A stretch of 40,593 bases of DNA, taken from the NCBI RefSeq assembly GCF_001194135.2, contig NC_069005.1:20654592-20695184 (forward strand), in the 5' to 3' direction. The notes beneath the pieces are model-generated. The model was not told the origin of the DNA, ran no database searches, and saw only the letters and a list, made by a program, of their open reading frames with translations. Positions 426-30,010 of this stretch are shown here, piece after piece (the first letter of the stretch is position 1; each line of letters opens with the position of its first letter). Origin of the DNA: Octopus bimaculoides (lineage: Eukaryota). Both the position numbers and the translations under genes were made by a program.

Positions 426-427
<2 letters not shown>

Positions 428-461: not shown

Positions 462-464
<3 letters not shown>

Positions 465-501
465 GGACTTTTTGTTGTTGAACATTTGAACTTTTTTTTG
501 C

Positions 502-960
502 AAGCATGGCAACACTGTGTTGGAGTGGGAGGTTGTTCTGCCCAAGCAGTGGGTGGATGGACTTGAGAAGAGGACAGTGGTCCTGCGAACCTTTTCTAGG
601 TTGCGAAACGCCATCACTCTCTTCGAAAAGGAATAAATAGAAAAAGAACTGGCGAACTGTTTTGTCTCTAGGGGTGTCAAATTTGCAACGGTATGGCAGC
701 AGTTTGACTCCCTGGAAGAAGCCTGCATTGTGGTTAGTCAGCCCATGTAGGGTGAAAAAATTCTGTTTCTCCCCACTTATTGTGGGAAGAGAATTATTAG
801 AGCCTGGGTTGGTGGTCAGCCCCAAGCATGGAGGCTGGATGGATCGAGGATACCGTCCAGCACGGTTTGAGGGATAGCGGATCCAGGTTGTTAAATGTGA
901 CAGTGGCTCCTGCGGTGAACTGGGAAGGGTCAAAGGCAACCATGACCCTATGGACCCCAG
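502..960 (+). pseudogene. Decayed coding fragment, possibly ORF1 of an L1/Tx1-like non-LTR element
   Basis: Frame reading EKRTVVLRTFSRLRNAITLFEKE*IEKEL...FLPTYCGKRIIRAWVGGQ, frameshift, PSMEAGWIEDTV; two stops; resemblance recalled, not searched. Confidence 0.35.
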
Positions 961-964
961 TAGT

Positions 965-1770
965 CACAAAAAAAACCCACCATAAGTTGGACAAGTTTGA
1001 AGAGGAACTTTAGACAGTTGTTAAGAACATTAAAATAAATAAACACCTTAGGAGGAACTTGCATTTGGAGTACCTTAGCAGAATTACCAGGGAAATTAAC
1101 AGAACAAACGGGATTTTAGTTAAATCGGATAAAACAGGAAACATATATAAACTACATAAACAATATTATCTTGACCTTCTTAAAAAAGAAATAGAAAAAA
1201 ACTACAAAATAACAAATAAGAACATGCTCAGAAAAGCGAATCTTGAAGCTAAGAAGTTAATGAATAACTTCAACCTTTTAAATAGAACTGAACCTCTTAG
1301 TGCCTCAAGAACCACATTTTATCCTGAAAGATCAGAAGAGTAATTTTTGGACTGATCCTTCCTTAAGACTCATTCGCCTGACTAAGTCAGATATAGGGAT
1401 ACTTAATAAGAATATATTAGATAAATATATCCCTACAACAGTTAGGAAATTGAAGCTTCATCTATGATCTAATTCTACACAAATAGTAGAATGGTTTAAA
1501 TTGATCAACGATAAGGAAAATGTGAAATTTATCCAATTCGATATTGCGAATTCTTATCCTTCAATTATACTTAATAAAGCATTGTGGTTTGCACACAATA
1601 AGGCAGGGCTTACAAGGGATGAGATTAATGATATATTAGCTGCTAGAAGATCTTTCATTAAATTCAATAACAAAATTTGGATTCGTAAGGATACCCCAGA
1701 TGCATTTGATGTCCCTATGAGTAGTTCTGATTCAGCACAAATTAGTGATTATATATGTGTGTATAGTTCA
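965..1770 (+). mobile_element. Penelope-like element reverse transcriptase fragment (pseudogenised)
   Basis: KSDKTGNIYK; after frameshift LKDQKSNF...LRLIRLTKSDIG; VEWFK...KFIQFDIANSYPSI; FDVPMSSSDSAQISD (PLE 'FDVTMGSxDGAEVCE'); stops and a frameshift. Confidence 0.85.
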
Positions 1771-2170
1771 GTGGAATCAACCTGCAGCTGTGGTAGCATT
1801 ACTAAAAAAACCGACCATTCAGGTTAGTCACTATATATATGTGTGTGTATAGTTCAGTGGATCAACCTGAAGCTGTGGTAGCATTATTGCAAAGACCGAC
1901 CATTCAGGTTAGAGACTATATATATGTGTGTATAGTTCAGCAGAATCAACCTGAAGCTGTGGTAATATTATTGCAAAGACCGACCATTCAGGTTAGTGAC
2001 TATATATATGTGTGTATAGTTCAGCAGAATCAACCTGAAGCTATGGTAATATTATTGCAAAGACCGACCATTCAGGTTAGTGACTATATATAAGTGTGTA
2101 TAGTTCAGCAGAATCAACCAGAAGCTGTGGTAATATTATTGCAAAGACTGACCATTCAGGTTAGTGACTA
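1742..2170. repeat. 84-bp tandem repeat, 5 units plus start of a 6th, running into an N-gap
   Basis: Units start at 1742, 1824, 1909, 1993, 2077, 2161 (TTAGTGACTATATATATGTGTGTATAGTTCAG...CCGACCATTCAGG). Confidence 0.95.
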
Positions 2171-2892
2171 NNNNNNNNNNNNNNNNNNNNNNNNNNNNNN
2201 NNNNNNNNNNNNNNNNNNNNNNNNNNNNNNNNNNNNNNNNNNNNNNNNNNNNNNNNNNNNNNNNNNNNNNTAGTGGCGCGAAATTATAGCCGCCATTGAG
2301 GAAGTACTATTCTGTGCATGTGCAGGGGACTTCACCACCGGAAGCCCCTCGAGTTGCGCATTCGTAGTAAAACTCGTACTTAAACAGTGGTTTCACTTTG
2401 TTAGGCGAGTTGAGCTCAGACCTTCTACATGGCAACACCTCGCTCCTCCACGAAGCACTTTTCACCATGATGCTATCGATGTGATAGCTACTTGCTTCTC
2501 TGGCAGGCACCAAGGAAGACCTTAACCTTCCATTACCAAAATACAATTCAATCAGTGGCTGCTAAGCTGAATGACAGGAATTTGTATAACCAAGTATCAT
2601 CATAAATAAAACCTTTTTACTATATTGTTAATTGTTCTATTGTCTCTTCATTTATAATGCTGTTGAAAGGTGATAGAGAGACTGAAGTCTCTATGACAAC
2701 TATCAAACCTTTATAGTATATGTGTGTGATTTGATTTTATAAATACTTTCAAATTTACTTCGTTTCCATTTTTCCTTATGTGTAATTTTAATTTATCTGT
2801 AAGGTGAGTGACGAATTTTGATTAATTTATTTTGTAAATCATTATTGTATATTTCTGTGTGTATTTTGTTTTCTAGTTTTCTTCACAGACAA

Positions 2893-3307
2893 TTTTCAGT
2901 CTTTTGTTTTATTTATACCTTTATGGTACACCTGTCTTTTGGGTGTTAAATTCACCTGATGAATCCAGTAATGTGCACAACTCTTCTATAGTAAAATTTT
3001 GTTGTATACCCAATTGAATATTAGCCAATAACCCATTTTCTATAGCGATATTTCAACAAAAATTTTTATAATTCTATATTTTGTTGAATTTACCTATATT
3101 TACCTGTAATTAGAGTCACTTTGTGACAAAAATTTTGGTATAGAATTGGTTGAGAACCTTTCGTTAAATTATCTTCCAAAAATCACAATATGTTGATAAA
3201 TAAAAAAGGAGTTGTTTAATGAAACCAGACTAAATTTATGATTATGTTAGAAATTAATTGAAACACATAAGGGGTGTATTTTGGTTAGAAATATGGTAAC
3301 GAAAGGG
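2893..3307 (+). mobile_element. Right end of a piggyBac-family element
   Basis: Ends GGTAACGAAAGGG|TTAA; closely similar to 29285-29628. Confidence 0.85.
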
Positions 3308-3335
3308 TTAATATTGTATTTATAATTCCACTACT

Positions 3336-3490
3336 CTCTGAGTGGTTGGCGTTAGGAAGGGCATCCAGCTGTAGAAACTCTGCCAAATCAGACTGGAGCC
3401 TGGTGTTGCCATCCGGTTTCACCAGTCCTCAGTCAAATCGTCCAACCCATGCTAGCATGGAAAGCGGACGTTAAACGATGATGATGATGA
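3336..3490 (+). mobile_element. RTE-type LINE/SINE 3' tail ending in (GAT)n
   Basis: GGTTGGCGTTAGGAAGGGCATCCAGC...GGACGTTAAACGATGATGATGA; reverse-complement copy at 23259-23440. Confidence 0.8.
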
Positions 3491-4294
3491 CTACTAAGTT
3501 AATGTAATGTATATTTAAATTTTGTATGGTTTCAATCTGAATGTTACCTACTTTATTTTATTTTATAATTTATTATTTATCTTGATTACATATCCTTAAA
3601 TTATTTCTCAAAATCATTTAAAACATAAAAAAAAATATTACTTGATAGGGTTAATCACAATGATGTAAATTATGTAGATCAAAAACCTTATTTTGACCAT
3701 TAATTTGTATTTCTGCAAGATCTATAATAGGTAATTTTCTTTACATTTCTTTTCTTCTCAAACCCCTAACGGTTTTCTTATTTGATGAAACAGCGCCGTA
3801 AACATGTCATCACTTAATATCCTAGGTTAACAATTGTACTTAGTTACTCTACTATATAACGGTTTTCTTAACCAATATTGCAAGCAGTTTCAATATGTTC
3901 ATGTCAAAACAACCCGATTTGAACTTCTCTACATACATGTAATTTATATACAAATAATAATGTTGTCTGTTGTGAATTAATGTAACTTGGCTCTGAAGAG
4001 ATGGAAGGCCCTAATTTCTAATCTCAGACAAGAGTAAGTCGGGATCTTGCATCAAAATGCACATAGGATAATAAACAAGTTTTATTAATATATAGGATTG
4101 CGTCATGGCTCTTATTTCAATTGATACGCACCCAAAATTGTATCACCTATACGAAAGTTATATTTAAACAAAGTATAAACAAGTTTTCAAGTGTGAATTT
4201 TGCTACTTTGGTAACAGTTACAATACTTAACTTACCAAAATATTTGGTAGATATTTAAATACGCAAATATATATGTGTGTGTATATATATATAT

Positions 4295-4835
4295 CGATTT
4301 GGAGCCCTACAGACAGGAGGCAGAGGCAACTGTGGAACAATCCTGGACAAATTTGAAGGAAGCTACAGTTGGAGTGTACAAAGAGGTTCTGGGAAGACGA
4401 CCAGTGAACAGGAAGCCTTGGATAAGTGACGAGACTTGGCAGAAAGTGGAGGAGAGGAAGATGCTGAAGCAGGAGTTGAACCAAGCCAGAACCCATCAGC
4501 AGAAGCAGGCTGTTGCTAGTAAGTATAGTGAGGCGCTGAGAGAAGTCAAGAAGAAACTAAGGAGAGACAGAAGAACATACTTCAATGAAGTGGCCGACGA
4601 AGTGGAAACAGCAGCGAGGAAAAGAGACTTGATGTCAATATATGCAACAATAAGGTTACTTCCGTCAGACCAGTAAAGGACAAGGCTGGATGGTTGCTAA
4701 CTTCCATTGAGGACCAACTGGCGAGATGGAAGGAACACTCTCAAGAAACATTTTATCGCCCTCCACCTCAATATCTGCAAGAATTGGGGCCAGGGATCCC
4801 GCTCAATATCCACATTGGAGAAATCACCAAAGCCG
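4295..4835 (+). mobile_element. RTE-clade LINE ORF2 fragment (linker between endonuclease and RT)
   Basis: EVLGRRPVNRKPWISDETWQKVEERK...KKKLRRDRRTYF..AARKRD; after a frameshift PVKDKAGWLLTSIEDQLARWKEH. Confidence 0.85.
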
Positions 4836-4847
4836 TGAAGAGCTTAC

Positions 4848-6720
4848 ACCTTTAGTGTTCAAATCGACCGTAACCAGCTAAAATTAATTAATTAAGCTCT
4901 ACAAAATTGCTAAAAAAAACAAACAAATCACATTATTGAATTCTCGTAGCTTTGAGATAATGCCTTTCCCGCCTTTATTCAAGTATAAATACCGTGAAAT
5001 TGTTTAGACCACATGGTTTTTTTAACGTTTGAAGAGAAGTGCTTTCCTTGGTTGTGAAAGAAATGGCATCAGCAAGTAGTGATTCCGACTTTGAAGGATT
5101 TACAATTAATGATACAGAAAATATAAACGAAAACAAAAGTATTTTGTCTTCAGATGAATCTGATATCGATATCAGTGATTTTTCGTCGGACGAGGAAGAG
5201 TTTAATAATGAAAGTGATGAAAATCATAGCGTAAACATGGCAACATGGTCAAAAATCACAACACCAAACACTATCTCGGATTTTACAGAAAACACTGGTC
5301 CACAACATAATTTACCTCCTGATGCTCAACCATTAGACTATCTTTTTATTTTTACCAGAAAGTTTTTATGAAACTGTTGCTGAAGAAAGGGACAAATATG
5401 CACAACGTTTAATTTCTGTTTGTGGAAGAAACGATCCACTGTGGCAGCCAACTAATACTGCAGAAATGAGTGTTTTTTACAATTAATATGTTTGGTGTTA
5501 AACAGCTTCCTTGACTGTGAAACTATTGGAGTCCCGATGTGAGGTATGGTGATCCATATAGCTCAAGCATAATGTCGAAAGCGAGGTATTCGAAAATATC
5601 TCAGTATTTACATTTAACTGATTCTGAAAATGCCCCCAACAAAAACCACCCAAACTACAATCCCCTGTACAAAGTATGCCCTGTACTTAATTTACTTGCA
5701 AATAATTATAGAACTGTATATCTTCCTGGGAAAAATCTCAGTGTAGATGAAACCATGATAGGCTATAAGGGCAGAGTACATTTTCGGCAGTACATGCCTG
5801 CCAAACCTACTAAATGGGGGATCAAGGTATGGGAAGTTTGTGAATTGGAGACGGGATATTGTGTAAACTTCGATGTTTTCACAGGGAAAAAATATAATGG
5901 AAACAGACAGCATGGATTGGGACATGATGTAGTATGGTCTCTCACTGAACCACTGAACCATCAGCACCGACACCTATTTCAACCATTTTCTTTCGTCAGT
6001 GACTTTGGTGGAAAATTTTGCCCGCGTAAGTACTTACATGTGCAGTACTGTTATGAGCAACCGTAAAGGTTTACCCCACGAATGGAAAATAAAATTAAAA
6101 AATAGAGGGGACATTTTACAGATGCAAAAAGAAAATCTATTAATTACTGCTTATAAAGACAAAAGACAGATTTTATTTCTGTCTTCTAATGATCGGGCAT
6201 ATTACCCAGTTGGTCGACCCGGGAAGAAATGGTGGAGGTATATTTTGTGGTTTCTAGTTAATTTAACTATCGTAAATTCATATATTGTATATGTAAAAAG
6301 CCACAAAGTACCTCCACCACCAAAAGACTACGACCACTTGAAATTTTGGGTTGACATCGCATCTCAGTTACTTGAGGGCCTTTCTTCTAGAAAGCACAGA
6401 ACTGAGAGAAAAGCAAAATTAACTGAGGTGGATGTCAGAGAAAATATTGACTTTCATCAAGTCAGAAAGATAAATGGAAGGAAAAAGTTTGCAGACTGTG
6501 TTCGCTGCAAAAGGATATCAAGTCAAGACCTCACATGTGTTCGTTTTCGAAAGCGCCCTTGTATAAAGGATGCTTTGGACAGTTTCACGACAGAAACATA
6601 GCATAAGTGTATAATTTTGTATATTCATTTTCATTTTATTATATAATATGTGAAAGTGAGAACTACATATTAATTTTTAGTATGTTACATATCTGTATTC
6701 ACCTTTGTCTCACCTGTTAA
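4848..6720 (+). mobile_element. piggyBac-family element with disrupted PGBD4-like transposase (5063-6601)
   Basis: Acidic N-terminus SSDSDFEGF; LSVDETMIGYKGR...YMPAKPTKWGIKVW; NRKGLP; AYKDKRQILFLSS; KKWWRYILWFL; Cys-rich tail; several frameshifts and deletions; left end TTAC|ACCTTTAGTGTTCAAA; right TIR not seen. Confidence 0.9.
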
Positions 6721-6746
6721 TGAGATGCATCCTGTTACGTAAATAA

Positions 6747-7840
6747 ATTCCACACTTTCACATCATTTCCTGGCATGTCAACCATCCAAGTAACATACAT
6801 GCTTTCTACTCGCTTAAAAACATTAAGAACATTCCCAAACCTTATGATATAAACGCTACCAAAGTATTCAACCCAAAGGGACTTTGCCATTATCTCATCA
6901 GCGATAAAGAGGAAAGACAAACAATAGCCGCATCGAACATTCAAAAGGAAGGACAATTAGCCTTTCTTAAGCAACTCACAGACAAACCATACAAACAAGA
7001 AGCACACAAGAATTACAAAAACAATGATCAAGTCTCATATACAAACGAAATGATAGTACGTGGCCAAAAACACGATTTCATAAAAAAACTTATGAACCAT
7101 GCTAATTCAACAGAGTCAGGAGATGTAATTACATTCGCGAAAAATACCAACAACATACAAATCAGAAACGAATGAAACGACATATACAAAAACACGCCCA
7201 AGCTTCTCAACCTAATACAATCTGCAGCTACAGAAATAAACATAAAAACAATTACAGTCCCAATATGGCAACAAATTTAACAAAAGAACGAACTATTTGG
7301 AACCACAAACTGCCGATATCACGATGTTCAAACTTCTCTCGATATATATTCGACATGGCTACACCACTATAATTTCAATAAAGGCAAACATTCGAAGTGT
7401 GCCACAAAGTCGACCCCAAAAGTAATGGATTACACATCACAGAAGTATCAAACTCTGTTAAGTCATACATACTAAGATCGATTAAAAACGGACTCATCAC
7501 AACAGGGAGGATGAGATGCCAAGCAAGCGATAATTTTACATTCGGTAGTTGCGTTGACAAGCCTCTTATTTATATGGACGAAATGTGGTTTACCATTAAT
7601 AACATGGAAGAGGCTAAATGTATGCTCGAGGGAACAAACACATTCATAAACGTAAAACATCAAGCAGAAAGAGTCCTCAAGAGAACTCCTAGTATATCCA
7701 CTAGCAATACAGAACCGTGGAGAGTTGTTCAGCAAGAAGAACAAGCCATTAGAAACAGGCTATACTACTACTACTACGAAACATAGAAATCAATGCCTCA
7801 ACTTAAACAATGGGGACAAATCGAATTGAACCCACTCATG
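6747..7840 (+). pseudogene. Endogenous parvoviral element: NS1 (HUH nuclease + SF3 helicase), disrupted
   Basis: PHFHII (HUH, 6753-6761), YLISDK (6891-6908), decayed Walker A EVSNSVKS (7442-7465), Walker B IYMDE (7568-7582), KCMLEG..INVKH, motif C TSN (7700-7708), PWR...IRNRL; stops at 7173, 7278, 7784; frameshift near 7390. Confidence 0.85.
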
Positions 7841-7899
7841 TGTGTGTGTATGTTTGAGCCCACAAAATATGTGTGTGTGTGTGTGTGTATGCGTGTGCA

Positions 7900-8116
7900 C
7901 ACACGTTGTGCATATGTTTATCCCCACCATTTGACAACTGGTGTTGGTGTGTTTAGATCTCCATAACTTGGCAGTTCAGCAAAAGTGACCAAAAGAATAA
8001 GTACCAGGCTTAAAAAAATAAAAGTTCTAGGGTCAATTCATTCGGCTAAATATTCTTCAAAGTGGTGCCCCAGCATAGCCACAGTCTAATGACAAAAACA
8101 AGAAACAAATAAAAGA
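7900..8116 (+). mobile_element. tRNA-derived SINE, 3' half
   Basis: CTTGACAAC..GGTGTGTT..AGAATAAGTACCAGGCT..GGTGCCCCAGCATAGCCACAG tail shared with full copies at 8342, 20060, 36376. Confidence 0.75.
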
Positions 8117-8242
8117 TAATTTAAATACCTTTGGTCATACGCCTACTTGATCAAGCCAGGTAACAACCTTGGTTACTTTTGATAGCAATGGAATGCTTTA
8201 AAGAAGGCATACATAGATACAGATAGATAGTGCAAAATGCAT

Positions 8243-8283
<41 letters not shown>

Positions 8284-8341
8284 AGATGAGTTGAGCAGGC
8301 TAGATATTTATAAAGTAAAACAGGAAGGAAATTTAAACATG

Positions 8342-8715
8342 TAGGCACAGGCATGGCTGTGTGATAAGAAGCTTGCTTCCCAACCACATGGTTGCAGGTT
8401 CAATTACAGTGTGTGACAGCCACAGGCTGACCAAAGCCTTGTGAATGCATCTGGTAAATGGAAGCTAAAAGAAGCCAGTTGTGAGTGTGTATTTATGTGT
8501 GCATGTCTGTGTTTGTCCCTCCCCCCGTCATTGCTTGACAACTGATGCTGGTGTGATGTCCCTGTAACTTAGCAATTTGGCAAAAGAAACTCGAAAGAAT
8601 AAGTACTAGGCTTACAAAGAATAAGTCCTAGGGTCAATTCCATCAACTAAAAGCCTTTAAGGTGGTGCTCCAGCATGGCTGCAGTCAAATGACTGAAATA
8701 AGTAATATAATAAAA
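8342..8715 (+). mobile_element. tRNA-derived SINE
   Basis: Head GGCATGGCTGTGTG (A box), GGTTCAATT (B box), GT-repeat middle, GGTGCTCCAGCATGGC tail. Confidence 0.8.
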
Positions 8716-9159: not shown

Positions 9160-9735
9160 TTGGGTTGGCAAGAAAGTAATTTCTGTTTTTTTTTAGTGTG
9201 AAATAAAAGTCATTTTTTTCAAGCTTCTTAAAGGGTCCAAGACATTTTAAGTGATTTTCGATTGTTGTGTGTGATACATTTAAACTCTCTGCAATCTCTC
9301 GCACAACTATATGACAATAAGATTCAATTATGGTTTTGATTTGGTCATAAAATTCAGTAGGTCGACCAGAACATTGGTCATCTTTGAATGAAAAATCTCC
9401 AGAATAGAATTTTCAAAACAATTTCTGACATGTGCATTGTATTAAGCAATCAACACCATAAACTTCATATATCTCTTTGTGAACCTCAGTTGCTTTCTTG
9501 GCTTTATGGAAATTTAAAAAAATCAAAATATGGTGAAAAATGTTCATTTTTGCACTTTATGCTAAAATTGACACCGAACAGCTGTAAACAAAATTACGTG
9601 CAATTTGCTTCTAAAGTAAGCTAAAAGTAACAGCTATCAATTGTCAAAAGGAAAAAATCATAACACTGACATAAGCCATTAAAAAAAAAAAAATCTCTAT
9701 TTGCAAAAAACGAAATTACTTTCTTGCCAACCCAA
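9160..9735 (-). mobile_element. Internally deleted mariner element (576 bp)
   Basis: Perfect 24-bp TIR TTGGGTTGGCAAGAAAGTAATTTC, TA on both sides; minus strand encodes a mariner N-terminus (HFHHIL...SGDFSFKDDQCSGRPTE...REIAESLNVSHTTIENHLK); no catalytic domain. Confidence 0.9.
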
Positions 9736-10497
9736 TAGACTGAACAACAGCAGGGGTGTGCATACAATATCTACACAGAACAACATGGATTTCATCCATT
9801 CATTCAGGCAAACTTTGAAAAGCTAACAGCCACCTGTTTGTCTATATCATATGGAATGATATGACAGGATCAGTACTTTACACCACATACAATCTCCCAC
9901 AGGGTTTAATTAGCAATATATGATGGTGAATTTTTGTTTCTAAAACATGGCAGGTGGGTATGGGCAATTTGTTAAATTGTGGGAGGTATTTTATCAATTA
10001 GATATATGTAGGTGGCAGGAAAAGTTTTTTTTTTTTTTAATCGAATGATAGAAATATGGTTTTAATGGAAAGGGGTGAGAAGAAGTGGAATGGGGATAAT
10101 TATAGGAATATTTTTAGAAGTGGGGGACTTAATTAGATGAAGGAGGGCTGAAGAAGGGCAAGGGGGATTTTATCATTAGAATAGTGGAAAAAATTTCAAA
10201 ATTTAAAATAAGCTGACACACAAGTGTGTTTCTCAACACACAAAATTCAACCATGAATTAAGAATAAAATCTTGCCAGCCTGGCAGACTTTGTGTGTGTC
10301 TTATACAGAAACAGAACATGCAAAATTTGTAGTCATAAAGGTTATAGACCTTATTAGACAACAAACAGCAATTGAAAATTAAAGGGGGGAAAAAAACAAA
10401 AACAAAAACAAATTCACTGGTAAACATAAACAGGATTCTAGAAACTTCCCTGCTGCTGTGACAAATGCTTGTTGACAACTCAGCTGAAGACTTGGTT

Positions 10498-10578
10498 TCA
10501 TTCTATCTTGCTGTTCTCTATTTGTTTCGTACTCGGAATATAAACTTTAAAGGAGAAATTTGACCGTGAAAAGGATCC
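10498..10578 (-). CDS. POLE2: POLE2 exon 15 (last coding), GSFSRSNFSFKVYIPSTKQIENSKIE*
   Basis: attttcag acceptor, TGA at 10500-10498; matches 'GSF.RS.FSFKV'. Exon sum 1569 nt = 522 aa + stop. Confidence 0.95.
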   Translation of the reverse strand, partial: GSFSRSNFSFKVYIPSTKQIENSKIE

Positions 10579-10679
10579 CTGAAAATATAATTAAAAACAA
10601 TCAATAAGTTGAAAATATGAAACATACAATTAATTCTGATTTCAAATTTTGACACAAGCCAACAATTTTAGGGAAGCGG

Positions 10680-10823
10680 GGTACCTAACTGGTACTTTTT
10701 TTTATCGACCCAAAGAAGATGAAAGGCAGACAGGACCTTGGCGGAATTTGAACTCAGAACGTGAAGATGGACAAAATAGTGCTAAACATTTTGCCCAGAG
10801 TGCTAATGACTGTTAGCTCACCA
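10680..10823 (-). mobile_element. tRNA-derived SINE (second family)
   Basis: Reverse complement of the GAGCT..TTAGCAC..GTTCTGAGTTCAAATTCCGCC family also at about 24445-24595 and 24878-25050. Confidence 0.7.
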
Positions 10824-11279
10824 CCATAAACATTAATTTTGACATGCCAAATAGGAACAAGTGTGGTTAAGAAGTTTACTTTTCAACCACATGCTTTCAG
10901 TTTCAGTCCCACTGTGCAACATGTTGGGCAAGTGTCCTTTACCCTTGCCTCAAGCAAAGGTTTCCGAGTGGATATGGTAGATGGAAACTTAAAGAAGCCC
11001 ATTCATAAAGAACATGTCTGACCATAGGAAAATACTACCTTGCTTGAAAACTGGAGATGGTTGCCTCAACAAATTCAGTGGGACCCAAGGAATCATGGAA
11101 AAGTGGATATTAAAAGAATGATGATGATATACAATGGAAATTATGACTAATGAATAAATATTGTCTTAATCATGGGTTTTTTCATTTTTAATTAAGATCT
11201 AAAAATCAGCCATTAACTTTACACCAACCTGATACCTATGTATGTATGTATGTATGTATGTATGTGTATATCAGATACA

Positions 11280-11448
11280 CACACATACAATGGGCTTCTT
11301 TCGGTTCCCATCTACCAAATCAACTCACAAGGCTTTGGTTGGTCTGAGGCTATAAGAAAAGGCACTTGCCCAAGGTGCCATGCAATGGGACTAAACCCAG
11401 GACCACGTGGTTAGGAACGAAGCTTCCAACCACGCAGCCACACCTGCA
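11280..11448 (-). mobile_element. tRNA-derived SINE head, inverted
   Basis: Reverse complement of the 8342/36376 SINE 5' half. Confidence 0.75.
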
Positions 11449-12304
11449 CTATATGCACAAACATTTTCTGTTATGATATGCATGTTTTCCTAAAAAAAAA
11501 CAAAAAAACAAATTTGTCCTCAAATACTTTATGTAACCTCTGTGTGTGTGTGTTTGAGTCATGGACTCTCCCATGATGTACAAGGCTTTGGCAATATCTT
11601 GTCAAACAACCATACAGATGATTTGTTTATAGTGATCAAATGCTTGTGTTCACACAAGCTCACTCCCTCCATCATATGGACATTACCTGTACAGGTGCAC
11701 CATGTGCCACATGACGAAATGATCGCAGAGCAAAATGAAATGAGGTGCTTTGCTCAAGAATACAATGCAACACCTGGTCTGGGAATTGAACCCACAATCT
11801 CGCAATATATATAAGGTATAAATAATGGTCATTACATATTTTTACTGTAGTAAATTTGACTTACAGCCGTTTCCAGTAATCATTATAGTTACGTTATAAA
11901 TAGATTTGTTCAATCAGTCCACTGATTGGTTGGGAGATATTGAACAACCTAAAAAATTAATACTACTTTTGTCCGAGTCATTTCTGGTTATCTGATCAAA
12001 TGATTTTCCTTCATTTTGCTGACATGAATTGACCTCTCCTCATCACATGAGATTTCTACCAGATGTTTTTGTGGACAACCTATCAATAACAAACCTATGG
12101 TGACTACTGGAAACAGCTGTATGTCAAACTTACTGCAATAAAGGAAAATTATGTAATGACCATTATTTCAAACTTGTCTTGTATATCACTGTGTAAAAGA
12201 CCAGTATAACCAGAGCACAACCACAGATTTACAATATAGAATGGTGATGAACTATAACCTCGGACCCTGCCACAAGAATACAGAGTTCTTTACAATATTG
12301 TTAG

Positions 12305-12672
12305 TTGTTGGCACTCCGTCGCTTACGATGTCGAGAGTTCCAGTTGATCCGATCGTGAAATTAACGTACAAGTGGCTGAGCACTCCACAGACACGTGTAC
12401 CCTTAACGTAGTTCTCGGGGATATTCAGCGTGACACAGTGTTACAAGGTTGACCCTTTGAATTACAGGTACAACAGAAACAGGAAGAAAGAGTGAGAGAA
12501 AGTTGGGGTGAAAGAGTACAGCAGGGTTCACCACTGTCCCCTGCCGGAGCCTCGTGGAGCTTTAGGTGTTTTCGCTCAATAAACACTCACAATGCCCGGT
12601 CTAGGAATCGAAACCGCGATCCTATGACTGCAAGTCCGCTGCCTTAACCACTGGGCCATTGCGCCTCCACTC
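12305..12672 (-). mobile_element. Young tRNA-derived SINE (third family) with ~13-bp target-site duplication
   Basis: Head GGCGCAATGGCCCAGTGG (A box), GGTTTCGATTCC (B box); CpGs intact; ACAATATTGTTAG at 12292-12304 and 12673-12685. Confidence 0.85.
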
Positions 12673-12832
12673 ACAATATTGTTAGCTTGGTGTACTAACA
12701 GAGAGCTTATAAAGTATTTTGATAATTCCTCACTAATAACTCACGTGTGTTTGCATGTGTGTGTATGTATAAGGTGGAAAGCCTGTGAGATAACTACACA
12801 ACAAAACAAAAAACTGTTAATGTGTTACTTAC

Positions 12833-13009
12833 AGGATTTGTTATGATGCAGTCAAGAGAATTTACTGTGAAACCATCATATTTGCCAGCGCATACAAGTA
12901 AATCTGGCAAGGGATAGAGCTGCAAGCCACAGTCATAGGCCCAATAAACTGGACATACATGAAGTGGTAGTGGACAGAGGTGACCCTGGGACACTATAGT
13001 TTTAGCAAA
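12833..13009 (-). CDS. POLE2: POLE2 exon 14, [59 protein letters not shown]
   Basis: gattttcag acceptor, GTAAGT donor, 177 nt; signature '[18 protein letters not shown]'. Confidence 0.97.
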
Positions 13010-13299
13010 CTGAAAATCAAGAAAGAAACAATGGTCAGAAATCAGATTATGTATTTACATACGAAGGAAGGAATGTCTCAAGAAATTCTGTCCAACTCAA
13101 ACTTGAAAAAAATGGACATAAAAACTATTATAAAGCTGATTATTATAAAACTATTATAAAGCTGATTATGCAAACACAATAAGACTGAATCAACATCATC
13201 ATCATCATTTTACTTCTACTTTTACATGCTTGTATGAACAGAGTTTACTGCAGCAAATTTTCTATGTCCAGATACCCTGCCTGTTGCCAAGCTATTTCA

Positions 13300-13656
13300 T
13301 TCTGTTTTACTTTTATGGTACACCTATCTTATGTGCATTAAGTTCAACTGATAGATAATTCAGTAATTTGTACAATTCTTCTATATTAAAATTTTGTTGT
13401 AAGCTCATTTTCTATGCTGGTGTTTAAACAAAATTTAAATAATTTTACATTTTGATCAATTTACCTGTAATGAGGTAAAAATTATGAAAAAGACTTGCTT
13501 AAGAGCCTTTTATTAAATTGTGTTTAAAAACAATCACATTTGTATGTTGACAGCTACAAAAGTTAGAGTTGTTTTATTAAACCAGTCTAAATTCACGATT
13601 ATTTAAATGAAACACATAAGGGGTATATTTTGGTTAGAAATATAGTAATGAAAGGG
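13300..13656 (+). mobile_element. Older, degraded right end of the same piggyBac family as 2893-3307 and 27959-29628
   Basis: TTTATGGTACACCT...GGTTAGAAATATAGTAATGAAAGGG|TCAA. Confidence 0.75.
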
Positions 13657-13822
13657 TCAAGAGAACCCTTCACTCCACACAGCCCAAAAAATGGCACATA
13701 GTAAAATTGCATCAACTTAAAGAGTTAGTGCTTTCCTTTATTTTAGATGCCATTTACAAATCAATTCCAATTATAGTCAGCAGAAATGAAGAATAAAAAG
13801 AAGATATGACAGAAATACTTAC

Positions 13823-14006
13823 ATGAGTAGGCACATCGCCAGAGGTAGGAAATCTGATACAACTGCGACAAAGCTTGGTAACAATATCTTCTCGAAAGAC
13901 AACAATCTCTTGTGTACAATATTGGATCCGACAAGGATTGCTGGTGAATATTGCATGAGGGATTTTCTTCCGGAAATATTCTGTGATAGAGTTGGGAATG
14001 GCAGGT
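13823..14006 (-). CDS. POLE2: POLE2 exon 13, PAIPNSITEYFRKKIPHAIFTSNPCRIQYCTQEIVVFREDIVTKLCRSCIRFPTSGDVPTH
   Basis: gatttgcag acceptor, GTAAGT donor, 184 nt; signature 'NPCRIQYCTQEI.VFRED'. Confidence 0.97.
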
Positions 14007-14054
14007 CTGCAAATCAAAGGCAAAGAAATGTAAAAGATTCCATAATGACACAGG

Positions 14055-14395
14055 TTGTGTGGTTAAGAAGCTCACTTTACAAGTATATGGTTGTGGGTTC
14101 AGTCTCACTGTGCAGCATCTTGGGTAAGTGCGTTCTACTAACCCTCAGGTAGGCTAATGCCTTGTGAGTGAATGTGGCAGGCAGAAACTGTATGGAAGCC
14201 TACTGTCACTTGATAACCAGTGTTGGTTTGTTTACATCCCTGTAACATTAGCAGTGTAGCAAGAGGCTAATAGTATGAGTAACAGACTTAGAAATACGTA
14301 TTGTATTCAATTTGCTTGACTAAACACTTCAAGTAGTACCCCAGCATGGTCACAGTCCAATGACCAAAACAAGTAAAAGATAAAAACAAAAAGAA
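14055..14395 (+). mobile_element. tRNA-derived SINE (degenerate)
   Basis: GGTTGTGTGGTTAAGAAG..GGGTTCAGTCTCACTG head and CCCAGCATGGTCACAG..AAGTAAAAGATAAA tail. Confidence 0.7.
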
Positions 14396-14729
14396 AATGA
14401 TAAAAAAAAGAAAGAGAAAAGTTTATTAAACACGGATGTAAGGTATGGTGATACGGCTAAGAAATTCACTTCTCAACCAAGTGGTTCTATGTTTGATCCC
14501 ACTGTGGAGTACCTTGAGTGCTTTCTGCCATAACCTTAGGTGGACTGATATTTTGTGGAATAGAATTTGGTAGAAGGAAGCAATGCAAAAGCCTGTTGCC
14601 TGTGTGTATCAATGTGTTAGAAACATTATGTATTGTTCAGCACCAGGTGGAACATGTGGTCAAACAAAAGCATTGCAGCCACAACCATCACTTCACAGGA
14701 ATACTTCCAACATATATGCCATTATTTAA

Positions 14730-14906
14730 CCCTTTAGCATCTAAACTAGCCATATCCAGTTAAAAAATCTATCCTATGTACAAACTGGCCAGATCCAGCC
14801 TCTCACACCTACCCTACAATGCCATTCCAAAAATAATCACATCACTGAAATTTCAAAGAGACGAGATAAGTATTACATTTGATAAAGTAATCTGAATGCT
14901 AAAATG
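14730..14906 (+). mobile_element. piggyBac-type MITE (~180-210 bp family)
   Basis: TTAA|CCCTTTAGCAT...AATGCTAAAATG|TTAA; same-orientation relatives at 15249-15435, 15907-16120, 16262-16467. Confidence 0.8.
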
Positions 14907-15701
14907 TTAAAACAATACAGGTGTGGTTTGAAAGAAATTTAGCTTCATTTTCTAAAAGGTTGTCCTCATCACCATTTAACGTCCACCTTCCATGCTGGCA
15001 TGGGTTGGACAGTTTGACCGGAACTGACCAGGCAGGAGCCTGCACCAGACTTGTGTGTCTGTTTTTACAGCTGGATGTCCTTCCTTTACAGTGTGGACTG
15101 GATTACTTTATGTAGCATCAACATGCATGCTTGAAAATGAAGAAAATTTATTTAATCAACTGATGTTGGTGTTTTCTAACCTTTTTTTCAAGTAGTACCC
15201 CTGTATGGCTTTGAATATCAAATTATTTTAGTGTTTCTTGTGTTTTAACCATTTAAACCAACCATATCCGGCCCAAATATTCTACTTGTTTTATGTTCAA
15301 ACTGCCAAGATCTGGCCTCTTACACCTACCCTATAATGTCATTGTAAAAATATACAATCACATCATCAAAATCTCAAAACAATGAGATAATGCATAATTA
15401 ATTCAAAATGACGTCAATAAATAAGCATCATATTATGAATATAAGTTACTCATAAACGATGTAAATAAATAAGAAATTGCATTTGATAGCAGCTTATTTC
15501 TTCACATCATTATGTGAATGGTAATAAGAAACTATGCAATTTCTGTCAAATTGCATGACAGAATAATCTGATACTCTATTGTGAATCAATGCTAAGAGTC
15601 AATGATGGGACATTGCTACACAAATTCTATGATGTGTGAAGCTATGTGGCACATTTTTCACAGTATATGGTGTCATTTGATAGAAAGTATGTGATACTTA
15701 C

Positions 15702-15816
15702 CGAGGGAGTATGTTCGTAGGTCCTGGGTCCAATGGACCTGGGACAAATATGAACCTACAACAGTCCTTAAGATTCTGGTATTTACAGATTATATCACAC
15801 AATTCAATAAATGATT
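15702..15816 (-). CDS. POLE2: POLE2 exon 12, (E)SFIELCDIICKYQNLKDCCRFIFVPGPLDPGPTNILP(R)
   Basis: ttttttcag acceptor, GTAAGT donor, 115 nt; signature 'RF.FVPGP.DPG...ILPR'. Confidence 0.95.
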
Positions 15817-15906
15817 CTGAAAAAACAATACAAGATATATTTTTATTATTATTATTGATAATATAATGGAGTGGTGGTAAAAGAGCAAACAGTTGTATTT
15901 CATTAT

Positions 15907-16120
15907 CCTTTTAGCATTCAAACTGACCATATCCAGCCCAAATGTTCTGCTTTATATTCTAACCAACCATATATGGCCTCTCACATCTATCCTACAATAA
16001 TATTCTAAAAATAAAACAATCACATCATTGAAATCTCAAGGCTATGAGATAATGCATGATTAATTCAAAATAATATGAATCTACAAATATATTTGAAAGA
16101 ATCATCTGAATGCTAAAGGG
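15907..16120 (+). mobile_element. piggyBac-type MITE copy
   Basis: CCTTTTAGCATTCAAAC...TGAATGCTAAAGGG termini; body shared with 14730 copy. Confidence 0.8.
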
Positions 16121-17475
16121 TTATATTTATCTTGAGTTCAAATCCTGCTATGATCAAATATACAGCCAAAATATTCTACCAGCTTTGTGTTCATATTAAC
16201 CAGATCCAGACTATCACACCTACCCTTGCCATGATCAAATTTACTTTCATTCATCACCATCAACTTTTTAACATTTAAATAGGCCATTTCTGGCCAAAAT
16301 AATCCGATCAGCCAAATCCAGCCTCTCACACTTATCTGACAATGTGATTCTAAAAATATACAATCACATCACTGAAATCTCAAAGTTACGAGATAAAGCA
16401 TGATTAATTCAAAACAATGTAAGTGAATAAGTATTACATTTGACGAAGTAATCTAAATGCTAAAGGATTAAGTAAGCTTGTTGCCACTTTAAGATTCGCT
16501 GATGAGGTCTAATAAGATAGAAACATGTCAGCAAGTGAATTTCTTAACCACTTGTTGTCCAATTTAGACATGTATTTATCTATTATATGTATATATGTAA
16601 GAAGTAAAAGAGATAAGTCCAGGCAGATATGTATAAAGCACTTAGTGTTAAACCAATTTGGTTAACTATATCAGGCAACTGGACACCGATAAATGCAAGT
16701 AGAATAAACATCCAAGGTAATTCCTCATGAACGACAAGGAAATCCAAACACACAGCTCTCTTTATATATTTCATGTTATGCTTAAAAGTAATGTATGTTA
16801 CCAGAATTGTCTGGCTTGAGTAGAACAAACCACTCCAAATCCTTTTTAGAGTATTCATGTAAATGAAGGACTGATCAGCCCATACTGGCATAGAGTCATA
16901 TAACAATAAAGCCAGGCCAAGTAATGATATTTTGAATGCATTTAATACATAGATATTATACACATTATGCAATAGGTAAAAAGGAATTCCTTATTTACAC
17001 AATATATTTCTGAGTTAAGACATTTCAAAATATAAACAGTACGATAGAATTTGCCTTTTATATATGGTCTTCAACAGTTTAAATCATCTATTAGTTGAGG
17101 GGAGGATGTAGCCAGAAGGGGTGAAATATCTATAGAAAGGGAGTGATATGTAGACATGAGATAAAAAGAAACATGAGGTGAAACTAAATCAGAGAAGAAA
17201 ATAAGAATAAGGATTAACAAAATAAAATAGAAACATTGAAAGCATGGAATTTTTAAAAGAAAAGCCTTAAACTGAAGATATGTAAGAGATGAATTCCCTT
17301 TTTATCTATTGCATAATGATCTGAAACATACATATTAAATGTATTCAAAATATCATTCCTTGATTTGACTATTATTATACATACATAGAAAGATATATAT
17401 TTCAATCAACAATCAGTGTTCATGTATTAGCATATCTGTGCCACAGATGCAAGGCTGAAAAAGACTATATATTAC

Positions 17476-17596
17476 CTCGAAGTATTTTGGTGTGATTGGC
17501 CTGGTGACACAGCGACGTGAAGTTACCACAAAAAACAAATGCAACAGGGGGGTGTTCAGAATAACCACTAAACAACACCTTTAATTTGTCAACCAC
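17476..17596 (-). CDS. POLE2: POLE2 exon 11, VVDKLKVLFSGYSEHPPVAFVFCGNFTSLCHQANHTKILR
   Basis: ttttag acceptor, GTAATA donor, 121 nt; signature 'PP..F..CGNF'. Confidence 0.95.
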
Positions 17597-18089
17597 CTAA
17601 AAGACAAAAATAAATAAATAACAATTTCTAACATAAGTACAAGGATCTAAATTTTGGAGGTACGGATATAAACAATTAGACTAACACCAGAATAGGATTG
17701 CTCTTTTAGTAAATCACAACAGCATTTCACTTCAGAAAGGAAGTGAATGCAACAATTTAGCCCACTACTTTATTAATTTGTCAATACAGTTAATTCTGTC
17801 ATTCTTCCTGTAACATTTTATTTTTTATCTTTTACTTATTTCAGTCATTGGACTGCAGCCTTGTGCAGGCATCATCATCAAAGGTTTAGCAGAAAGAAAC
17901 GGCCACACTACTTATTGTCCTTAAGGTCATTATTAATTTAGTCTCTTTTGCCAATCGGATAAGATACGGGAATATAAACAAACCAACACCAGTTGTCAAG
18001 TGGTGGTACAACAAACACACAAATACCCATGTACATATATACAAATACAATGTGATGCAGATGGATGAGGACAGTTTATAAAAGTACCA

Positions 18090-18440
18090 ATCGCTTAAAG
18101 TGAAAGCAAGTTGTGGAAGATGGAGACCCAAGAAGACATGGAACGAAGTACTGAAGGCCAATTTCTAAATGAACTTTACAAAGGAGATAACAGAGGACCA
18201 AGATACCTGGTGCAATGCTGTACTCAAGAAGACCTGCCAACCACAACAGAATTGAGATCCTAAAACCAAGACGCCACATAGAAAGCACAGGTGCTGGTGT
18301 CACATATTAGGAAGAGCATCCAGCCATAGAAAACAAACTAAAACAGAGTATGGAACCTGGTGTGGCCCCTGGCCATACCAGTTCCTGTCGAGCTGTCCAA
18401 TTCATGCCAGCATGGAAAACAGGTATTAAATGATAATGAT
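18090..18440 (+). mobile_element. RTE LINE 3' end fragment
   Basis: Decayed 'CGR.RPKKTW.EV' coding tail followed by CCAGCATGGAAAAC..TAAATGATAATGATGAT tail. Confidence 0.65.
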
Positions 18441-18544
18441 GATGTATATATTGCATAGAGTCAAAAGTTGTGCAACATTTTGGTAACGTATTTACTTTCT
18501 TTGTTAAGTTACAACAAAAGCAACTTAGCATTCAAAGTAGAGTG

Positions 18545-18650
18545 TTGCACCATCTGAAGCCATCTTTCTGCCAGAACTTTGATCTCATTCTGATGCCAGT
18601 TCTTGTTCAAGGTGAAGAACTCCACCACTGCTGCTTCCACTGAAAAGCAT
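18545..18650 (-). mobile_element. mariner transposase C-terminal fragment
   Basis: Minus strand VEAAVVEFFTLNKNWHQNEIKVLAERWLQMVQH resembles the mariner 'FF.SK...Y..GI..L..RW' tail. Confidence 0.6.
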
Positions 18651-19266
18651 TATTAAAGAGGACAGACTTAAATACCATTGGTTTCCACATCAATTTCACA
18701 ACTTGACTAAAATTTATATATTCCAAAGATCAGCCCTTCACTCTAGCACCTTTAACCAGGTGGCACCATCATCATTTTCACATCCACACAAGGGTTTGAT
18801 AGAATATACTAAGGCAAATTTCATATGGCCAAATGCCATCCTGTTGCCAACCCTGATATGTTTCTGAGGAAAGTAATATTTCCCCATAACCAGACATGTT
18901 TTCATTGAAGATTGGAAACAAAGGACACTGCTTGTATGACAGTGACACTCATTTACAACTATCACGTGAAGTCAAGACAAGGAGACAGTCACACACATAA
19001 TATACACATACACAATGGTATTCTTTCAATTTCCACCTACCAAATCTATTCACAAGGCTTTGAATAGCCCAGGGCTATAACAGACACTTGTCCAAGGTGT
19101 CATGCAGTGGGACTGAACCTAAAACCATGTGGTCGAAAAGCAAACTGTTACCATATAACTACACCTGCAAATTTTAAAAAGTAAACCAAAGAGAGTCTTT
19201 ATGGGATTGCTAACCTTGCAAGAAATAGCATCCAAATTTTCCTTCAAATCACAATCTTATCGTTAA

Positions 19267-19450
19267 CCCTTTAGCACTGAGATTACTCTGTCAAATGTTA
19301 TATCTATTCATTCACATTGTTGTGAATTAATCATGCATTTTGGTGGTGTGATTGTTTCATTTTCAGAATGCTGTGAGAGGCTGGACCATGCAAGTCAGAG
19401 CATAAAACAGAATACACGGGCTGAATTTGGATGATTTGAATGCTGAAGGG
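19267..19450 (-). mobile_element. piggyBac-type MITE, inverted relative to the 14.7-16.5 kb copies
   Basis: TTAA|CCCTTTAGCACTGAGATTACTCTGTCAAATG...AATGCTGAAGGG|TTAA; begins with the reverse complement of the other copies' 3' end. Confidence 0.8.
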
Positions 19451-19633
19451 TTAAAAAGATGACACACTGAAATGCTTTTTATTTCATATATATATATGTA
19501 TATATCTATATATATTTCAGTGAGAATGGTTTTGTTATACAGCACCGTATTTTACAATCCTGTAAATAATAATAAAGATATTTTTATATAAGCTTAGAGT
19601 TTATGGCGTTCACTGTTGGGGTTGTATACTTAC

Positions 19634-19775
19634 TTTGGGCTCATCTAACCAAACGTCAGACAGAAAGACAAACATGGACTCTTGATTTTCAACTTCAAGG
19701 TGACGCAGTTTGTCTGAAGCCTTAGCACAAGTTTTGAGAGGACCTCCAAAGAAGTTAATGTTGCCAAAATAGGAC
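19634..19775 (-). CDS. POLE2: POLE2 exon 10, [47 protein letters not shown]
   Basis: ccttgcag acceptor, GTAAGT donor, 142 nt; signature '[11 protein letters not shown]'. Confidence 0.97.

Positions 19776-20223: not shown

Positions 20224-20269
<46 letters not shown>

Positions 20270-29973: not shown

Positions 29974-30010
<37 letters not shown>

What the first reader, a model, noticed from the sequence alone, without database searches (positions are those of the whole stretch)
500..8715. Strand-polarised TE and virus graveyard lying antisense to POLE2 read-through: candidate piRNA-type locus
Seen: nine consecutive orientable fragments are all on +. They are the ORF1-like piece, Penelope RT, piggyBac right end, RTE tail, RTE ORF2, piggyBac transposase, parvoviral NS1 and two SINEs, and they span retro-, DNA-transposon and viral classes. 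POLE2 introns show mixed orientations. POLE2 is transcribed on - toward this block and stops about 1.8 kb away. Established: uni-strand piRNA clusters (Drosophila flamenco, mosquito EVE-rich clusters) accumulate antisense TE and viral fragments. Inference: read-through or a long 3' extension of a proliferation-linked gene could supply antisense anti-TE and anti-parvovirus small RNAs. Caveats: the selection is post hoc, 2271-2545 is unoriented, and the mariner at 9160 is on -.
Basis: inference. Interest (0 to 1): 0.72.

Follow-up and report, generated by a model that had tools for sequence, protein, structure and literature searches.

The report
Same-strand repeat debris downstream of POLE2
The 8-kb stretch downstream of the POLE2 gene really is a pile of decayed transposon pieces plus one parvovirus-like gene remnant, all on one strand, but a run this long is expected by chance, so nothing in the sequence marks it as a small-RNA (piRNA) defence locus.

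Summary
Tools confirm these on the + strand of 500-8715: a Penelope-like RT fragment, a LINE 3' tail, a LINE ORF2 linker fragment, a piggyBac transposase remnant, a parvovirus NS1/Rep-like remnant and two tRNA-type SINEs. POLE2 is on the minus strand. Its stop codon is at 10498-10500, 1.78 kb from the block. The count of nine is inflated. The 'ORF1-like piece' is unidentified and at least partly belongs to the Penelope-like element. The 'piggyBac right end' is a complete MITE with no intrinsic polarity. That leaves 7 independent orientable insertions, 6 of them on one contig, because the Penelope-like fragment lies across the assembly gap. The other 24 orientable repeats in the window split 14+/10-. 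A run of 7 or more among about 31 items has a 19% chance under random orientation (30% at the observed + bias). The minus strand of the block carries 14 poly(A) hexamers. The coding remnants are old and broken, whereas mollusc piRNA clusters are reported to favour young elements. No small-RNA or transcript data could be reached. Best reading: ordinary intergenic repeat and viral-remnant debris, co-oriented by chance. The piRNA-source reading is not excluded (about 4%).

The parts
480..908 (.). It has open frames on both strands.
   Evidence: No Pfam hit on either strand. No match to the Penelope-like profile. GC 0.48, CpG o/e 0.37, so not a CpG island.
909..1824 (+). Penelope-like element (PLE) ORF fragment covering the N-terminal third, up to the first RT motifs. 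Broken by 1 frameshift and 2 in-frame stops. The rest of the RT and the GIY-YIG domain are missing.
   Evidence: 686 relatives at E<=0.001. Colinear matches to residues 84-345 of proteins 760-800 aa long. Profile positions 81-330 of 709. tblastn span 909-1803. Relatives carry RVT_1 and GIY-YIG.
1742..2170 (.). Tandem array of 84-bp units, 5.1 copies, running into the assembly gap.
   Evidence: Tandem Repeats Finder score 686, 92% matches. Self-BLAST.
2171..2270 (.). Assembly gap (100 N). The flanks are unrelated and nothing spans it.
2271..2521 (.). Unclassified 250-bp stretch (GC 50%, CpG o/e 0.77) with open frames on both strands.
   Evidence: No Pfam hit. No other copy in the window. Composition.
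2522..3314 (.). Complete non-autonomous piggyBac-type MITE with TTAA and imperfect terminal inverted repeats at both ends. It has no coding content and so no intrinsic polarity.
   Evidence: Three copies end in ...GTAACGAAAGGGTTAA (3311, 13660, 29632). The end motif is over-represented (17 matches vs 5.9 expected). The left end TTAACCTTCCATTACC was read directly.
3328..3492 (+). 3' tail of a LINE family (the 'RTE tail'), 5'-truncated, ending in (GAT)n.
   Evidence: 94% identical to 23265-23428. Eight other copies in the window, 5+/3-. Other copies extend further 5' with shared sequence, and two copies share the (GAT)n end.
4290..4860 (+). Internal fragment of a LINE ORF2, the linker between the endonuclease and the RT. 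It has 1 frameshift and both catalytic domains are missing.
   Evidence: 5 relatives at E 3e-44 to 1e-25. P0001 lies directly after an Exo_endo_phos gene on the same strand in L001. blastn 4328-4830 to L001. tblastn 4314-4729.
5033..6601 (+). piggyBac transposase gene remnant, nearly full length, with at least 3 frameshifts. The element's ends were not found.
   Evidence: DDE_Tnp_1_7 E=5.4e-36 and 7e-6. C-terminal piece E=1.5e-11. No terminal inverted repeats found.
6747..7850 (+). Parvovirus NS1/Rep-like endogenous viral remnant. It is 5'-truncated, has at least 1 frameshift and at least 2 in-frame stops, and has no capsid gene.
   Evidence: Parvo_NS1 E=3.2e-10. AAV Rep40/Rep68 E=6e-7; family profile E about 1e-10. 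19 relatives at 55-79% identity. Colinear with L008 2329-3420. No coat-protein family in any frame.
7913..8119 (+). SINE, 3' part only.
   Evidence: 76-79% identical to the 3' parts of other copies.
8340..8715 (+). SINE, full length, with a tRNA-type head carrying A-box- and B-box-like motifs.
   Evidence: Copies at 20055, 21139 and 36375. Head motifs at the 5' end of four full-length copies.
9163..9737 (-). Internally deleted mariner remnant with inverted ends, in sense orientation to POLE2, between the POLE2 3' end and the block.
   Evidence: HTH_48 E=1.5e-7, above the family cut-off. Inverted ends read directly.
10498..34915 (-). POLE2 (DNA polymerase epsilon subunit 2) gene body as far as it was traced. 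The last coding exon is 10501-10578 and the TGA stop is at 10498-10500.
   Evidence: DNA_pol_E_B E=7e-21 and Dpoe2NT E=1.6e-4. Canonical splice sites and stop. Human POLE2 residues 439-524 of 527, E=3.5e-35.

Best explanation
The block is ordinary intergenic repeat debris in a repeat-rich animal genome. The SINEs look cephalopod-like, but the species was not identified. Seven unrelated insertions accumulated downstream of POLE2 over a long time and then decayed in place. They are a Penelope-like element, a LINE tail, a LINE internal fragment, a piggyBac transposon, a parvovirus-like NS1 gene captured as an endogenous viral element, and two SINEs. A polarity-free MITE sits among them. That all seven lie on the + strand is a coincidence of the kind expected many times per genome. 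No transcript, small RNA or function need be invoked. Shown: the identities, orientations and decay of the fragments, the position of POLE2, and the chance level of the run. Inferred: absence of function.
For: - Each fragment belongs to a different family, and none is linked to its neighbour elsewhere. The NS1 relatives have different flanks and no piggyBac or SINE homology.
- Every coding remnant is truncated and broken by frameshifts or stops.
- The same SINE, LINE-tail and MITE families are scattered through the other 32 kb of the window on both strands: 14+/10- overall and 13+/8- inside POLE2.
- Simulation gives P(run >= 7 among 31 items) = 0.19, or 0.30 at the observed + fraction, and P(run >= 8 among 32) = 0.10. 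With 1e5 to 3e6 orientable fragments per genome, about 800 to 23,000 runs of 7 or more are expected.
- One of the seven lies across an assembly gap.
- The neighbour on the POLE2 side, the mariner, is on the other strand.
Against: - Taken as a pre-specified block, 7 of 7 on one strand has probability 2^-6, about 1.6%.
- The shared strand is the one antisense to POLE2 transcription, which is what a read-through precursor model needs.
- The block's size (8.2 kb) falls within the 2.7-17 kb reported for mollusc piRNA clusters (PMC11067994).
- The window ends at the block's left edge, so the run could be longer than what is visible here.
Confidence: 0.85

Rival explanations
1. Uni-strand piRNA source fed by POLE2 read-through. 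RNA polymerase II fails to stop at the POLE2 poly(A) site in some tissue. It transcribes the minus strand across the block, and the transcript, antisense to all seven elements, is processed into piRNAs against those transposon families and the parvovirus-like sequence.
For: - All 7 orientable fragments are antisense to the POLE2 direction.
- POLE2 ends 1.78 kb away and points at the block.
- There is no canonical AATAAA on the minus strand between the stop and the block, only three ATTAAA.
- The block's size fits reported mollusc clusters (PMC11067994).
- PIWI and piRNAs are expressed throughout molluscs (PMC6128900).
- Read-through transcription feeds piRNA clusters in Drosophila (PMC6471301).
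Against: - The run is not significant once the post hoc choice is allowed for.
- The minus strand of the block holds 10 AATAAA and 4 ATTAAA, against about 5.6 AATAAA expected, so there is no sign of selection for an uninterrupted precursor.
- The mariner between POLE2 and the block is in sense orientation.
- The coding remnants are old and decayed, whereas mollusc clusters are reported to accumulate young elements (PMC6128900).
- Clusters cover only about 0.1-0.3% of mollusc genomes (PMC11067994, PMC6128900).
- No expression data exist for this locus.
Confidence: 0.04
2. Orientation filtering by the host gene. The block lies inside an extended POLE2 transcription unit (a long 3' UTR or termination zone) or inside an unseen minus-strand gene to the left. 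Insertions in sense orientation bring their own poly(A) and splice signals, so they were removed by selection, leaving antisense ones. No small RNAs are involved.
For: - Antisense bias of retroelements within transcription units is established knowledge for vertebrate genes.
- All 7 fragments are antisense to POLE2.
- POLE2 introns show a weak excess of antisense copies, 13 vs 8.
Against: - 13 vs 8 is not significant, and SINEs inside POLE2 split 6+/5-.
- The block starts 1.2-1.3 kb beyond the likeliest poly(A) hexamers.
- The mariner nearest the gene is in sense orientation.
- Nothing shows that transcription reaches the block.
Confidence: 0.07
3. Part of the pattern is an assembly artefact. 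The contig left of the gap, which carries the Penelope-like fragment, is placed or oriented wrongly, or the tandem array is collapsed.
For: A 100-N placeholder gap abuts an 84-bp tandem array, and the right flank is unrelated.
Against: Even without the left contig, six co-oriented fragments remain on one uninterrupted sequence, 2271-8715.
Confidence: 0.04

Closest known systems
Drosophila flamenco-type uni-strand piRNA clusters
   Same: Transposon fragments from several classes lie on one strand, downstream of a gene and antisense to the proposed direction of transcription.
   Different: flamenco is far larger, has its own promoter, is defined by small-RNA output and genetics, and is syntenically conserved. 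Here there are only 7 fragments in 8 kb, no expression evidence and no significance beyond chance.
Mosquito piRNA clusters rich in endogenous viral elements
   Same: A viral gene remnant is embedded among transposon fragments in the same orientation.
   Different: In this window there is one NS1-like remnant, from a DNA virus, and no small-RNA evidence. Related copies elsewhere sit in unrelated contexts.
Mollusc piRNA clusters (Lymnaea, Crassostrea and others)
   Same: The size range of 2.7-17 kb and the transposon richness are compatible (PMC11067994, PMC6128900).
   Different: Those clusters were called from mapped small RNAs and are reported to be enriched in young, low-divergence elements. 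Here the coding remnants are decayed. Only the short LINE tail and the MITE have close copies, at 94% and 91%.
Ordinary nested or adjacent transposon debris with an endogenous parvoviral element
   Same: Truncated, frame-broken remnants of unrelated families are packed together. The NS1/Rep helicase remnant has no capsid gene, and the same families are scattered on both strands nearby.
   Different: Nothing differs except the uniform strand, which is within chance.

Membership tests
Uni-strand piRNA cluster | Abundant 24-32-nt, 1U-biased small RNAs mapping almost only to one strand of the locus | not testable with these tools
   No small-RNA data can be reached. The window's genome is absent from the searchable collections. 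Small-RNA libraries exist for Octopus bimaculoides (PMC12479628), but the species of this window is not established.
Uni-strand piRNA cluster | Transposon fragments predominantly antisense to the precursor transcript, beyond what chance gives | tested here: inconclusive
   7 of 7 orientable fragments are on +. A run of 7 or more among 31 items has P=0.19-0.30. One fragment lies across a gap. About a fifth of the block is unclassified.
Uni-strand piRNA cluster | A long single-stranded precursor transcript from a defined promoter or from read-through | not testable with these tools
   Only indirect evidence is available. POLE2 points at the block. ATTAAA hexamers lie 437-593 nt after the stop, and 14 poly(A) hexamers lie on the minus strand of the block.
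Mollusc piRNA clusters as described | Enrichment in young, low-divergence transposon insertions | tested here: not met
   The Penelope-like, LINE, piggyBac and NS1 remnants are truncated and carry frameshifts or stops. SINE copies are 68-80% identical to others. Only the 165-bp LINE tail (94%) and the MITE (91%) have close copies.
Penelope-like elements | A reverse transcriptase joined to a GIY-YIG endonuclease in one ORF | tested here: met
   This is met for the family. Among 16 long relatives, 4 have RVT_1 and 3 have GIY-YIG, and the Y-R-D-D columns are invariant. The window's copy keeps only profile positions 81-330 of 709.
piggyBac transposons | A DDE_Tnp_1_7 transposase; TTAA-flanked terminal inverted repeats | tested here: met
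   The transposase domain matches at E=5e-36. Ends were not found for the coding copy. TTAA and inverted ends are present in the separate MITE 2522-3314.
Endogenous parvoviral element (Parvoviridae NS1/Rep) | An SF3 helicase of the NS1/Rep type | tested here: met
   Parvo_NS1 matches at E=3e-10, above the cut-off. AAV Rep40/68 matches at E=6e-7, and the family profile at E about 1e-10 over about 145 residues.
Endogenous parvoviral element (Parvoviridae NS1/Rep) | An N-terminal HUH nuclease domain and/or a capsid gene of parvoviral type | tested here: not met
   No nuclease or coat family is found in the window's remnant or in ORFs next to related copies. No relative is found in IMG/VR. The viral assignment therefore rests on the helicase alone.
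RTE clade of LINEs | Clade-specific RT/endonuclease phylogeny | not tested
   Only 'non-LTR retrotransposon' is supported. No clade reference was available. The presumed ORF2 C-terminus at 33938-34358 (-) got no family hit.
POLE2 / Dpb2 | A DNA_pol_E_B domain, the Dpoe2NT domain, and end-to-end colinearity with POLE2 | tested here: met
   DNA_pol_E_B E=7e-21 and Dpoe2NT E=1.6e-4. The C-terminus aligns to human POLE2 residues 439-524 of 527, E=3.5e-35.

The most novel reading that the evidence does not exclude
The block is a real uni-strand small-RNA source in a cephalopod-like genome. Its precursor is an extension of the POLE2 transcript past weak poly(A) signals. It would yield piRNAs antisense to Penelope-like, LINE, piggyBac and SINE families and to a parvovirus-like NS1 gene. 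That would be a gene-coupled defence locus carrying a DNA-virus memory in a mollusc.
Probability: 0.04. Interest if true: 0.7.

Novelty: already known. Interest (0 to 1): 0.15.

Why it matters
If the block were a piRNA source, it would link a housekeeping replication gene's transcription to transposon and virus defence in a cephalopod, a group for which piRNA clusters have hardly been described. On present evidence it is not special. It is a useful reminder that short runs of co-oriented repeats are common in repeat-rich genomes and cannot identify piRNA clusters without small-RNA data. The one item of modest independent value is the decayed NS1/Rep-like remnant. It belongs to a multi-copy family (19 clusters at 55-79% identity in public run assemblies) that has no close free-living viral relative in IMG/VR.

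Tried and rejected
1. The word-indexed protein search with the RT-like piece found nothing. The exhaustive search was needed.
2. The profile of Penelope-like relatives had no hit in the PDB. Pfam alone barely recognises the family.
3. The 'ORF1-like' stretch was tested with Pfam on both strands, the Penelope-like profile and repeat searches. No identity emerged.
4. Recovery of the window's own contig, to extend leftwards, failed. No such protein is on record, and the best hits to window ORFs are only 69-72% identical.
5. ARAGORN and Rfam found no tRNA-like SINE head. Polarity was set from A-box and B-box motifs instead.
6. I considered a piggyBac-NS1 composite element, because a weak DDE hit lies upstream of NS1 in L004. 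I rejected it: there is no similarity to the window's piggyBac, and the flanks differ between copies.
7. The presumed LINE ORF2 C-terminus at about 34 kb (-) could not be confirmed by Pfam or against the fetched loci. The tail's polarity rests on 5' truncation and the (GAT)n end.
8. The run accessions behind the related contigs are not mentioned in any searchable paper, so the source species remain unknown.
9. No literature was found on parvoviral or densoviral endogenous elements in cephalopods.
10. No terminal repeats were found for the coding piggyBac copy.

Full report
**What the window is.** The 40,593-base window is A+T-rich animal DNA (GC 0.36, CpG o/e 0.41) with four assembly gaps. Its SINEs look cephalopod-like to me. 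That is a recollection, not a test, and the species was not established.

**Assembly gap (tested first, as asked).** The gap at 2171-2270 is a 100-N placeholder. An 84-bp tandem array (5.1 copies, 1742-2170) runs straight into it from the left. The sequence that resumes at 2271 is unrelated and unique within the window. No reading frame or element crosses the gap. Homology to Penelope-like proteins ends near 1803. Continuity and relative orientation across the gap therefore depend on the scaffold, and everything left of 2171 has to be counted separately.

**Coding remnants in the block.**
- Six-frame translations of 500-8715, with stops marked X, gave Pfam hits on the + strand only. These were DDE_Tnp_1_7 (piggyBac transposase; E=5.4e-36 and 7e-6) and Parvo_NS1 (E=3.2e-10). 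The three minus frames gave nothing.
- The RT-like ORF piece 1468-1824 found 686 relatives in an exhaustive HMMER search.
- All the + strand pieces between 1014 and 1824 match those proteins colinearly, at residues 84-345 of proteins 760-800 aa long. They match a profile of 16 long relatives at positions 81-330 of 709 (E 4e-35, 6e-19, 5e-14).
- Among the 16 relatives, 4 have weak RVT_1 hits and 3 have weak GIY-YIG hits, and the alignment has invariant Y-R-D-D columns. This is the Penelope-like architecture.
- The window's copy keeps only the N-terminal third. It carries one frameshift and two in-frame stops.
- The LINE-like piece near 4290-4860 has five relatives (E 3e-44 to 1e-25). One of them lies directly downstream of an Exo_endo_phos gene on the same strand (L001). 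The piece is therefore the linker between the endonuclease and the RT of a non-LTR retrotransposon, on +. The 'RTE' clade label was not tested.

**The NS1-like remnant.**
- Its helicase part matches AAV Rep40/Rep68 (E=6e-7). The family profile matches at about 1e-10 over some 145 residues.
- Nineteen relatives at 55-79% identity exist in assemblies of public sequencing runs. All are fragmentary.
- Colinear homology to one of them (L008) extends over window 6747 to about 7850. The remnant is therefore about 1.1 kb long and 5'-truncated compared with that copy.
- It has at least one frameshift and at least two in-frame stops.
- No nuclease or capsid family was found in the window's copy or beside the relatives.
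- No relative was found in IMG/VR. The parvoviral assignment rests on the SF3 helicase alone.
- The related copies have different flanks and no piggyBac or SINE homology. The remnant is thus independent of its neighbours in the window.

**Non-coding repeats.**
- The 'piggyBac right end' is a complete MITE of about 790 bp (2522-3314). It has TTAA and imperfect inverted ends on both sides. Three copies in the window end in the same sequence. It has no intrinsic polarity.
- The 'RTE tail' (3328-3492) has eight other copies, 5+/3-. Other copies extend further 5' with shared sequence, and two copies end in (GAT)n. This is the 5'-truncation signature of LINE-type insertions and fixes its polarity as +.
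- The two SINEs are on +. Four full-length copies carry an A-box-like motif 10-20 nt from one end and a B-box-like motif 35-40 nt further in.
- The 'ORF1-like piece' matches no family on either strand. Penelope-like proteins reach up to 909, so at least its right part belongs to the Penelope-like element.

**POLE2 and what lies between it and the block.**
- POLE2 is on the minus strand (DNA_pol_E_B E=7e-21; Dpoe2NT E=1.6e-4).
- The last coding exon is 10501-10578, with canonical splice sites, and the TGA stop is at 10498-10500.
- The joined last two exons align to human POLE2 residues 439-524 of 527 (E=3.5e-35).
- On the minus strand, ATTAAA hexamers lie 437, 462 and 593 nt after the stop.
- An internally deleted mariner (9163-9737; HTH_48 E=1.5e-7) lies on the minus strand between them and the block.

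**Is the polarity more than chance?**
- After merging and excluding the items above, the block holds 7 independent orientable insertions. Six of them are on one uninterrupted sequence.
- The other 24 orientable repeats in the window are 14+/10-. Inside POLE2 they are 13+/8-. The longest run there is 4.
- Under random orientation, a run of 7 or more among 31 items occurs with probability 0.19, or 0.30 at the observed + fraction. A run of 8 or more among 32 items occurs with probability 0.10.
- A genome with 1e5 to 3e6 orientable fragments should hold about 800 to 23,000 runs of 7 or more.
- As a pre-specified test, 7 of 7 would be 1.6%. The block was chosen because of the pattern, and its right edge was set just before the minus-strand mariner.
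- Roughly a fifth of the block is unclassified and could hide fragments of either polarity.

**The piRNA reading.** It cannot be tested here. No small-RNA or transcript data can be reached, and the window's genome is not in the searchable protein or contig collections. Indirect evidence leans against it.
- The minus strand of the block carries 10 AATAAA and 4 ATTAAA, against about 5.6 AATAAA expected from composition. There is no sign of selection for an unbroken precursor.
- The coding remnants are old and broken. Mollusc piRNA clusters are reported to accumulate young, low-divergence elements (PMC6128900).
- Such clusters cover less than 0.1% to 0.27% of mollusc genomes (PMC11067994, PMC6128900).
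- In favour: the size of 8.2 kb fits the 2.7-17 kb reported (PMC11067994), the strand is the right one, and read-through transcription does feed clusters in Drosophila (PMC6471301).
- I combined a base rate of a few tenths of a percent with a likelihood ratio of perhaps 10-20 for the run, then discounted for the age of the fragments. This gives about 4%. The figure is my estimate, not a computed result.

**Verdict.** The best explanation is ordinary repeat debris with one endogenous parvovirus-like remnant, co-oriented by chance.

Noticed in passing
window 38367-38440 (+): Sub-threshold Rfam match to the mir-3 microRNA precursor family (33.7 bits against a gathering score of 54; E=0.0076). Probably chance.
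   Followed up: no
window 35381-35542 and 36220-36381; 36875-37113; 38022-38137: A 162-nt inverted duplicate at 95.7% identity, about 680 nt apart, lies just upstream of the POLE2 N-terminal exon. A palindromic stretch nearby has a 92% inverted copy 1 kb away. Both look like foldback elements or MITEs.
   Followed up: no
window 6750-7850, 2271-2521, 4870-6750 versus 7900-8715: CpG o/e is 0.85 in the NS1-like remnant, 0.77 in the unclassified 250-bp stretch and 0.66 in the piggyBac remnant. It is 0.16 in the SINEs and 0.41 window-wide. The counts are small. The difference could reflect younger age or different methylation history.
   Followed up: no
L004-L009 (Logan run assemblies): The NS1-like sequence belongs to a multi-copy family: 19 protein clusters at 55-79% identity, all fragmentary. 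Copies of the L004 type and the L008 type share only the NS1 region and have different flanks. The same L004-type contig recurs in several runs. The source organisms are unknown.
   Followed up: partly
whole window; e.g. 14726, 19263, 27955 (-), 3302, 29623 (+): The piggyBac-type end motif AAAGGGTTAA is over-represented: 17 matches at up to 1 mismatch against 5.9 expected, reached in 0 of 100 shuffles. A further repeat family at 14738-16481 and 19251-19339 carries such ends. The POLE2 introns therefore hold many piggyBac-derived MITEs.
   Followed up: partly
window 2959-3490 and 29284-29757: In two of its three copies, the MITE's right end is followed within about 10-60 nt by a + copy of the LINE-tail repeat. 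This may be a shared insertion preference or a composite unit. It remains unexplained.
   Followed up: no
window 186-963 (-): Two long overlapping open frames on the minus strand (184 and 196 aa) lie in the stretch at 480-1010 that is richer in G+C. Neither has a family hit. Probably a compositional effect.
   Followed up: partly
window 33938-34358 (-) with 33625-33725 (-): A presumed LINE ORF2 C-terminal fragment, followed by a copy of the LINE tail, lies in sense orientation inside the POLE2 intron next to the N-terminal exon. No family hit was obtained for the ORF pieces.
   Followed up: partly
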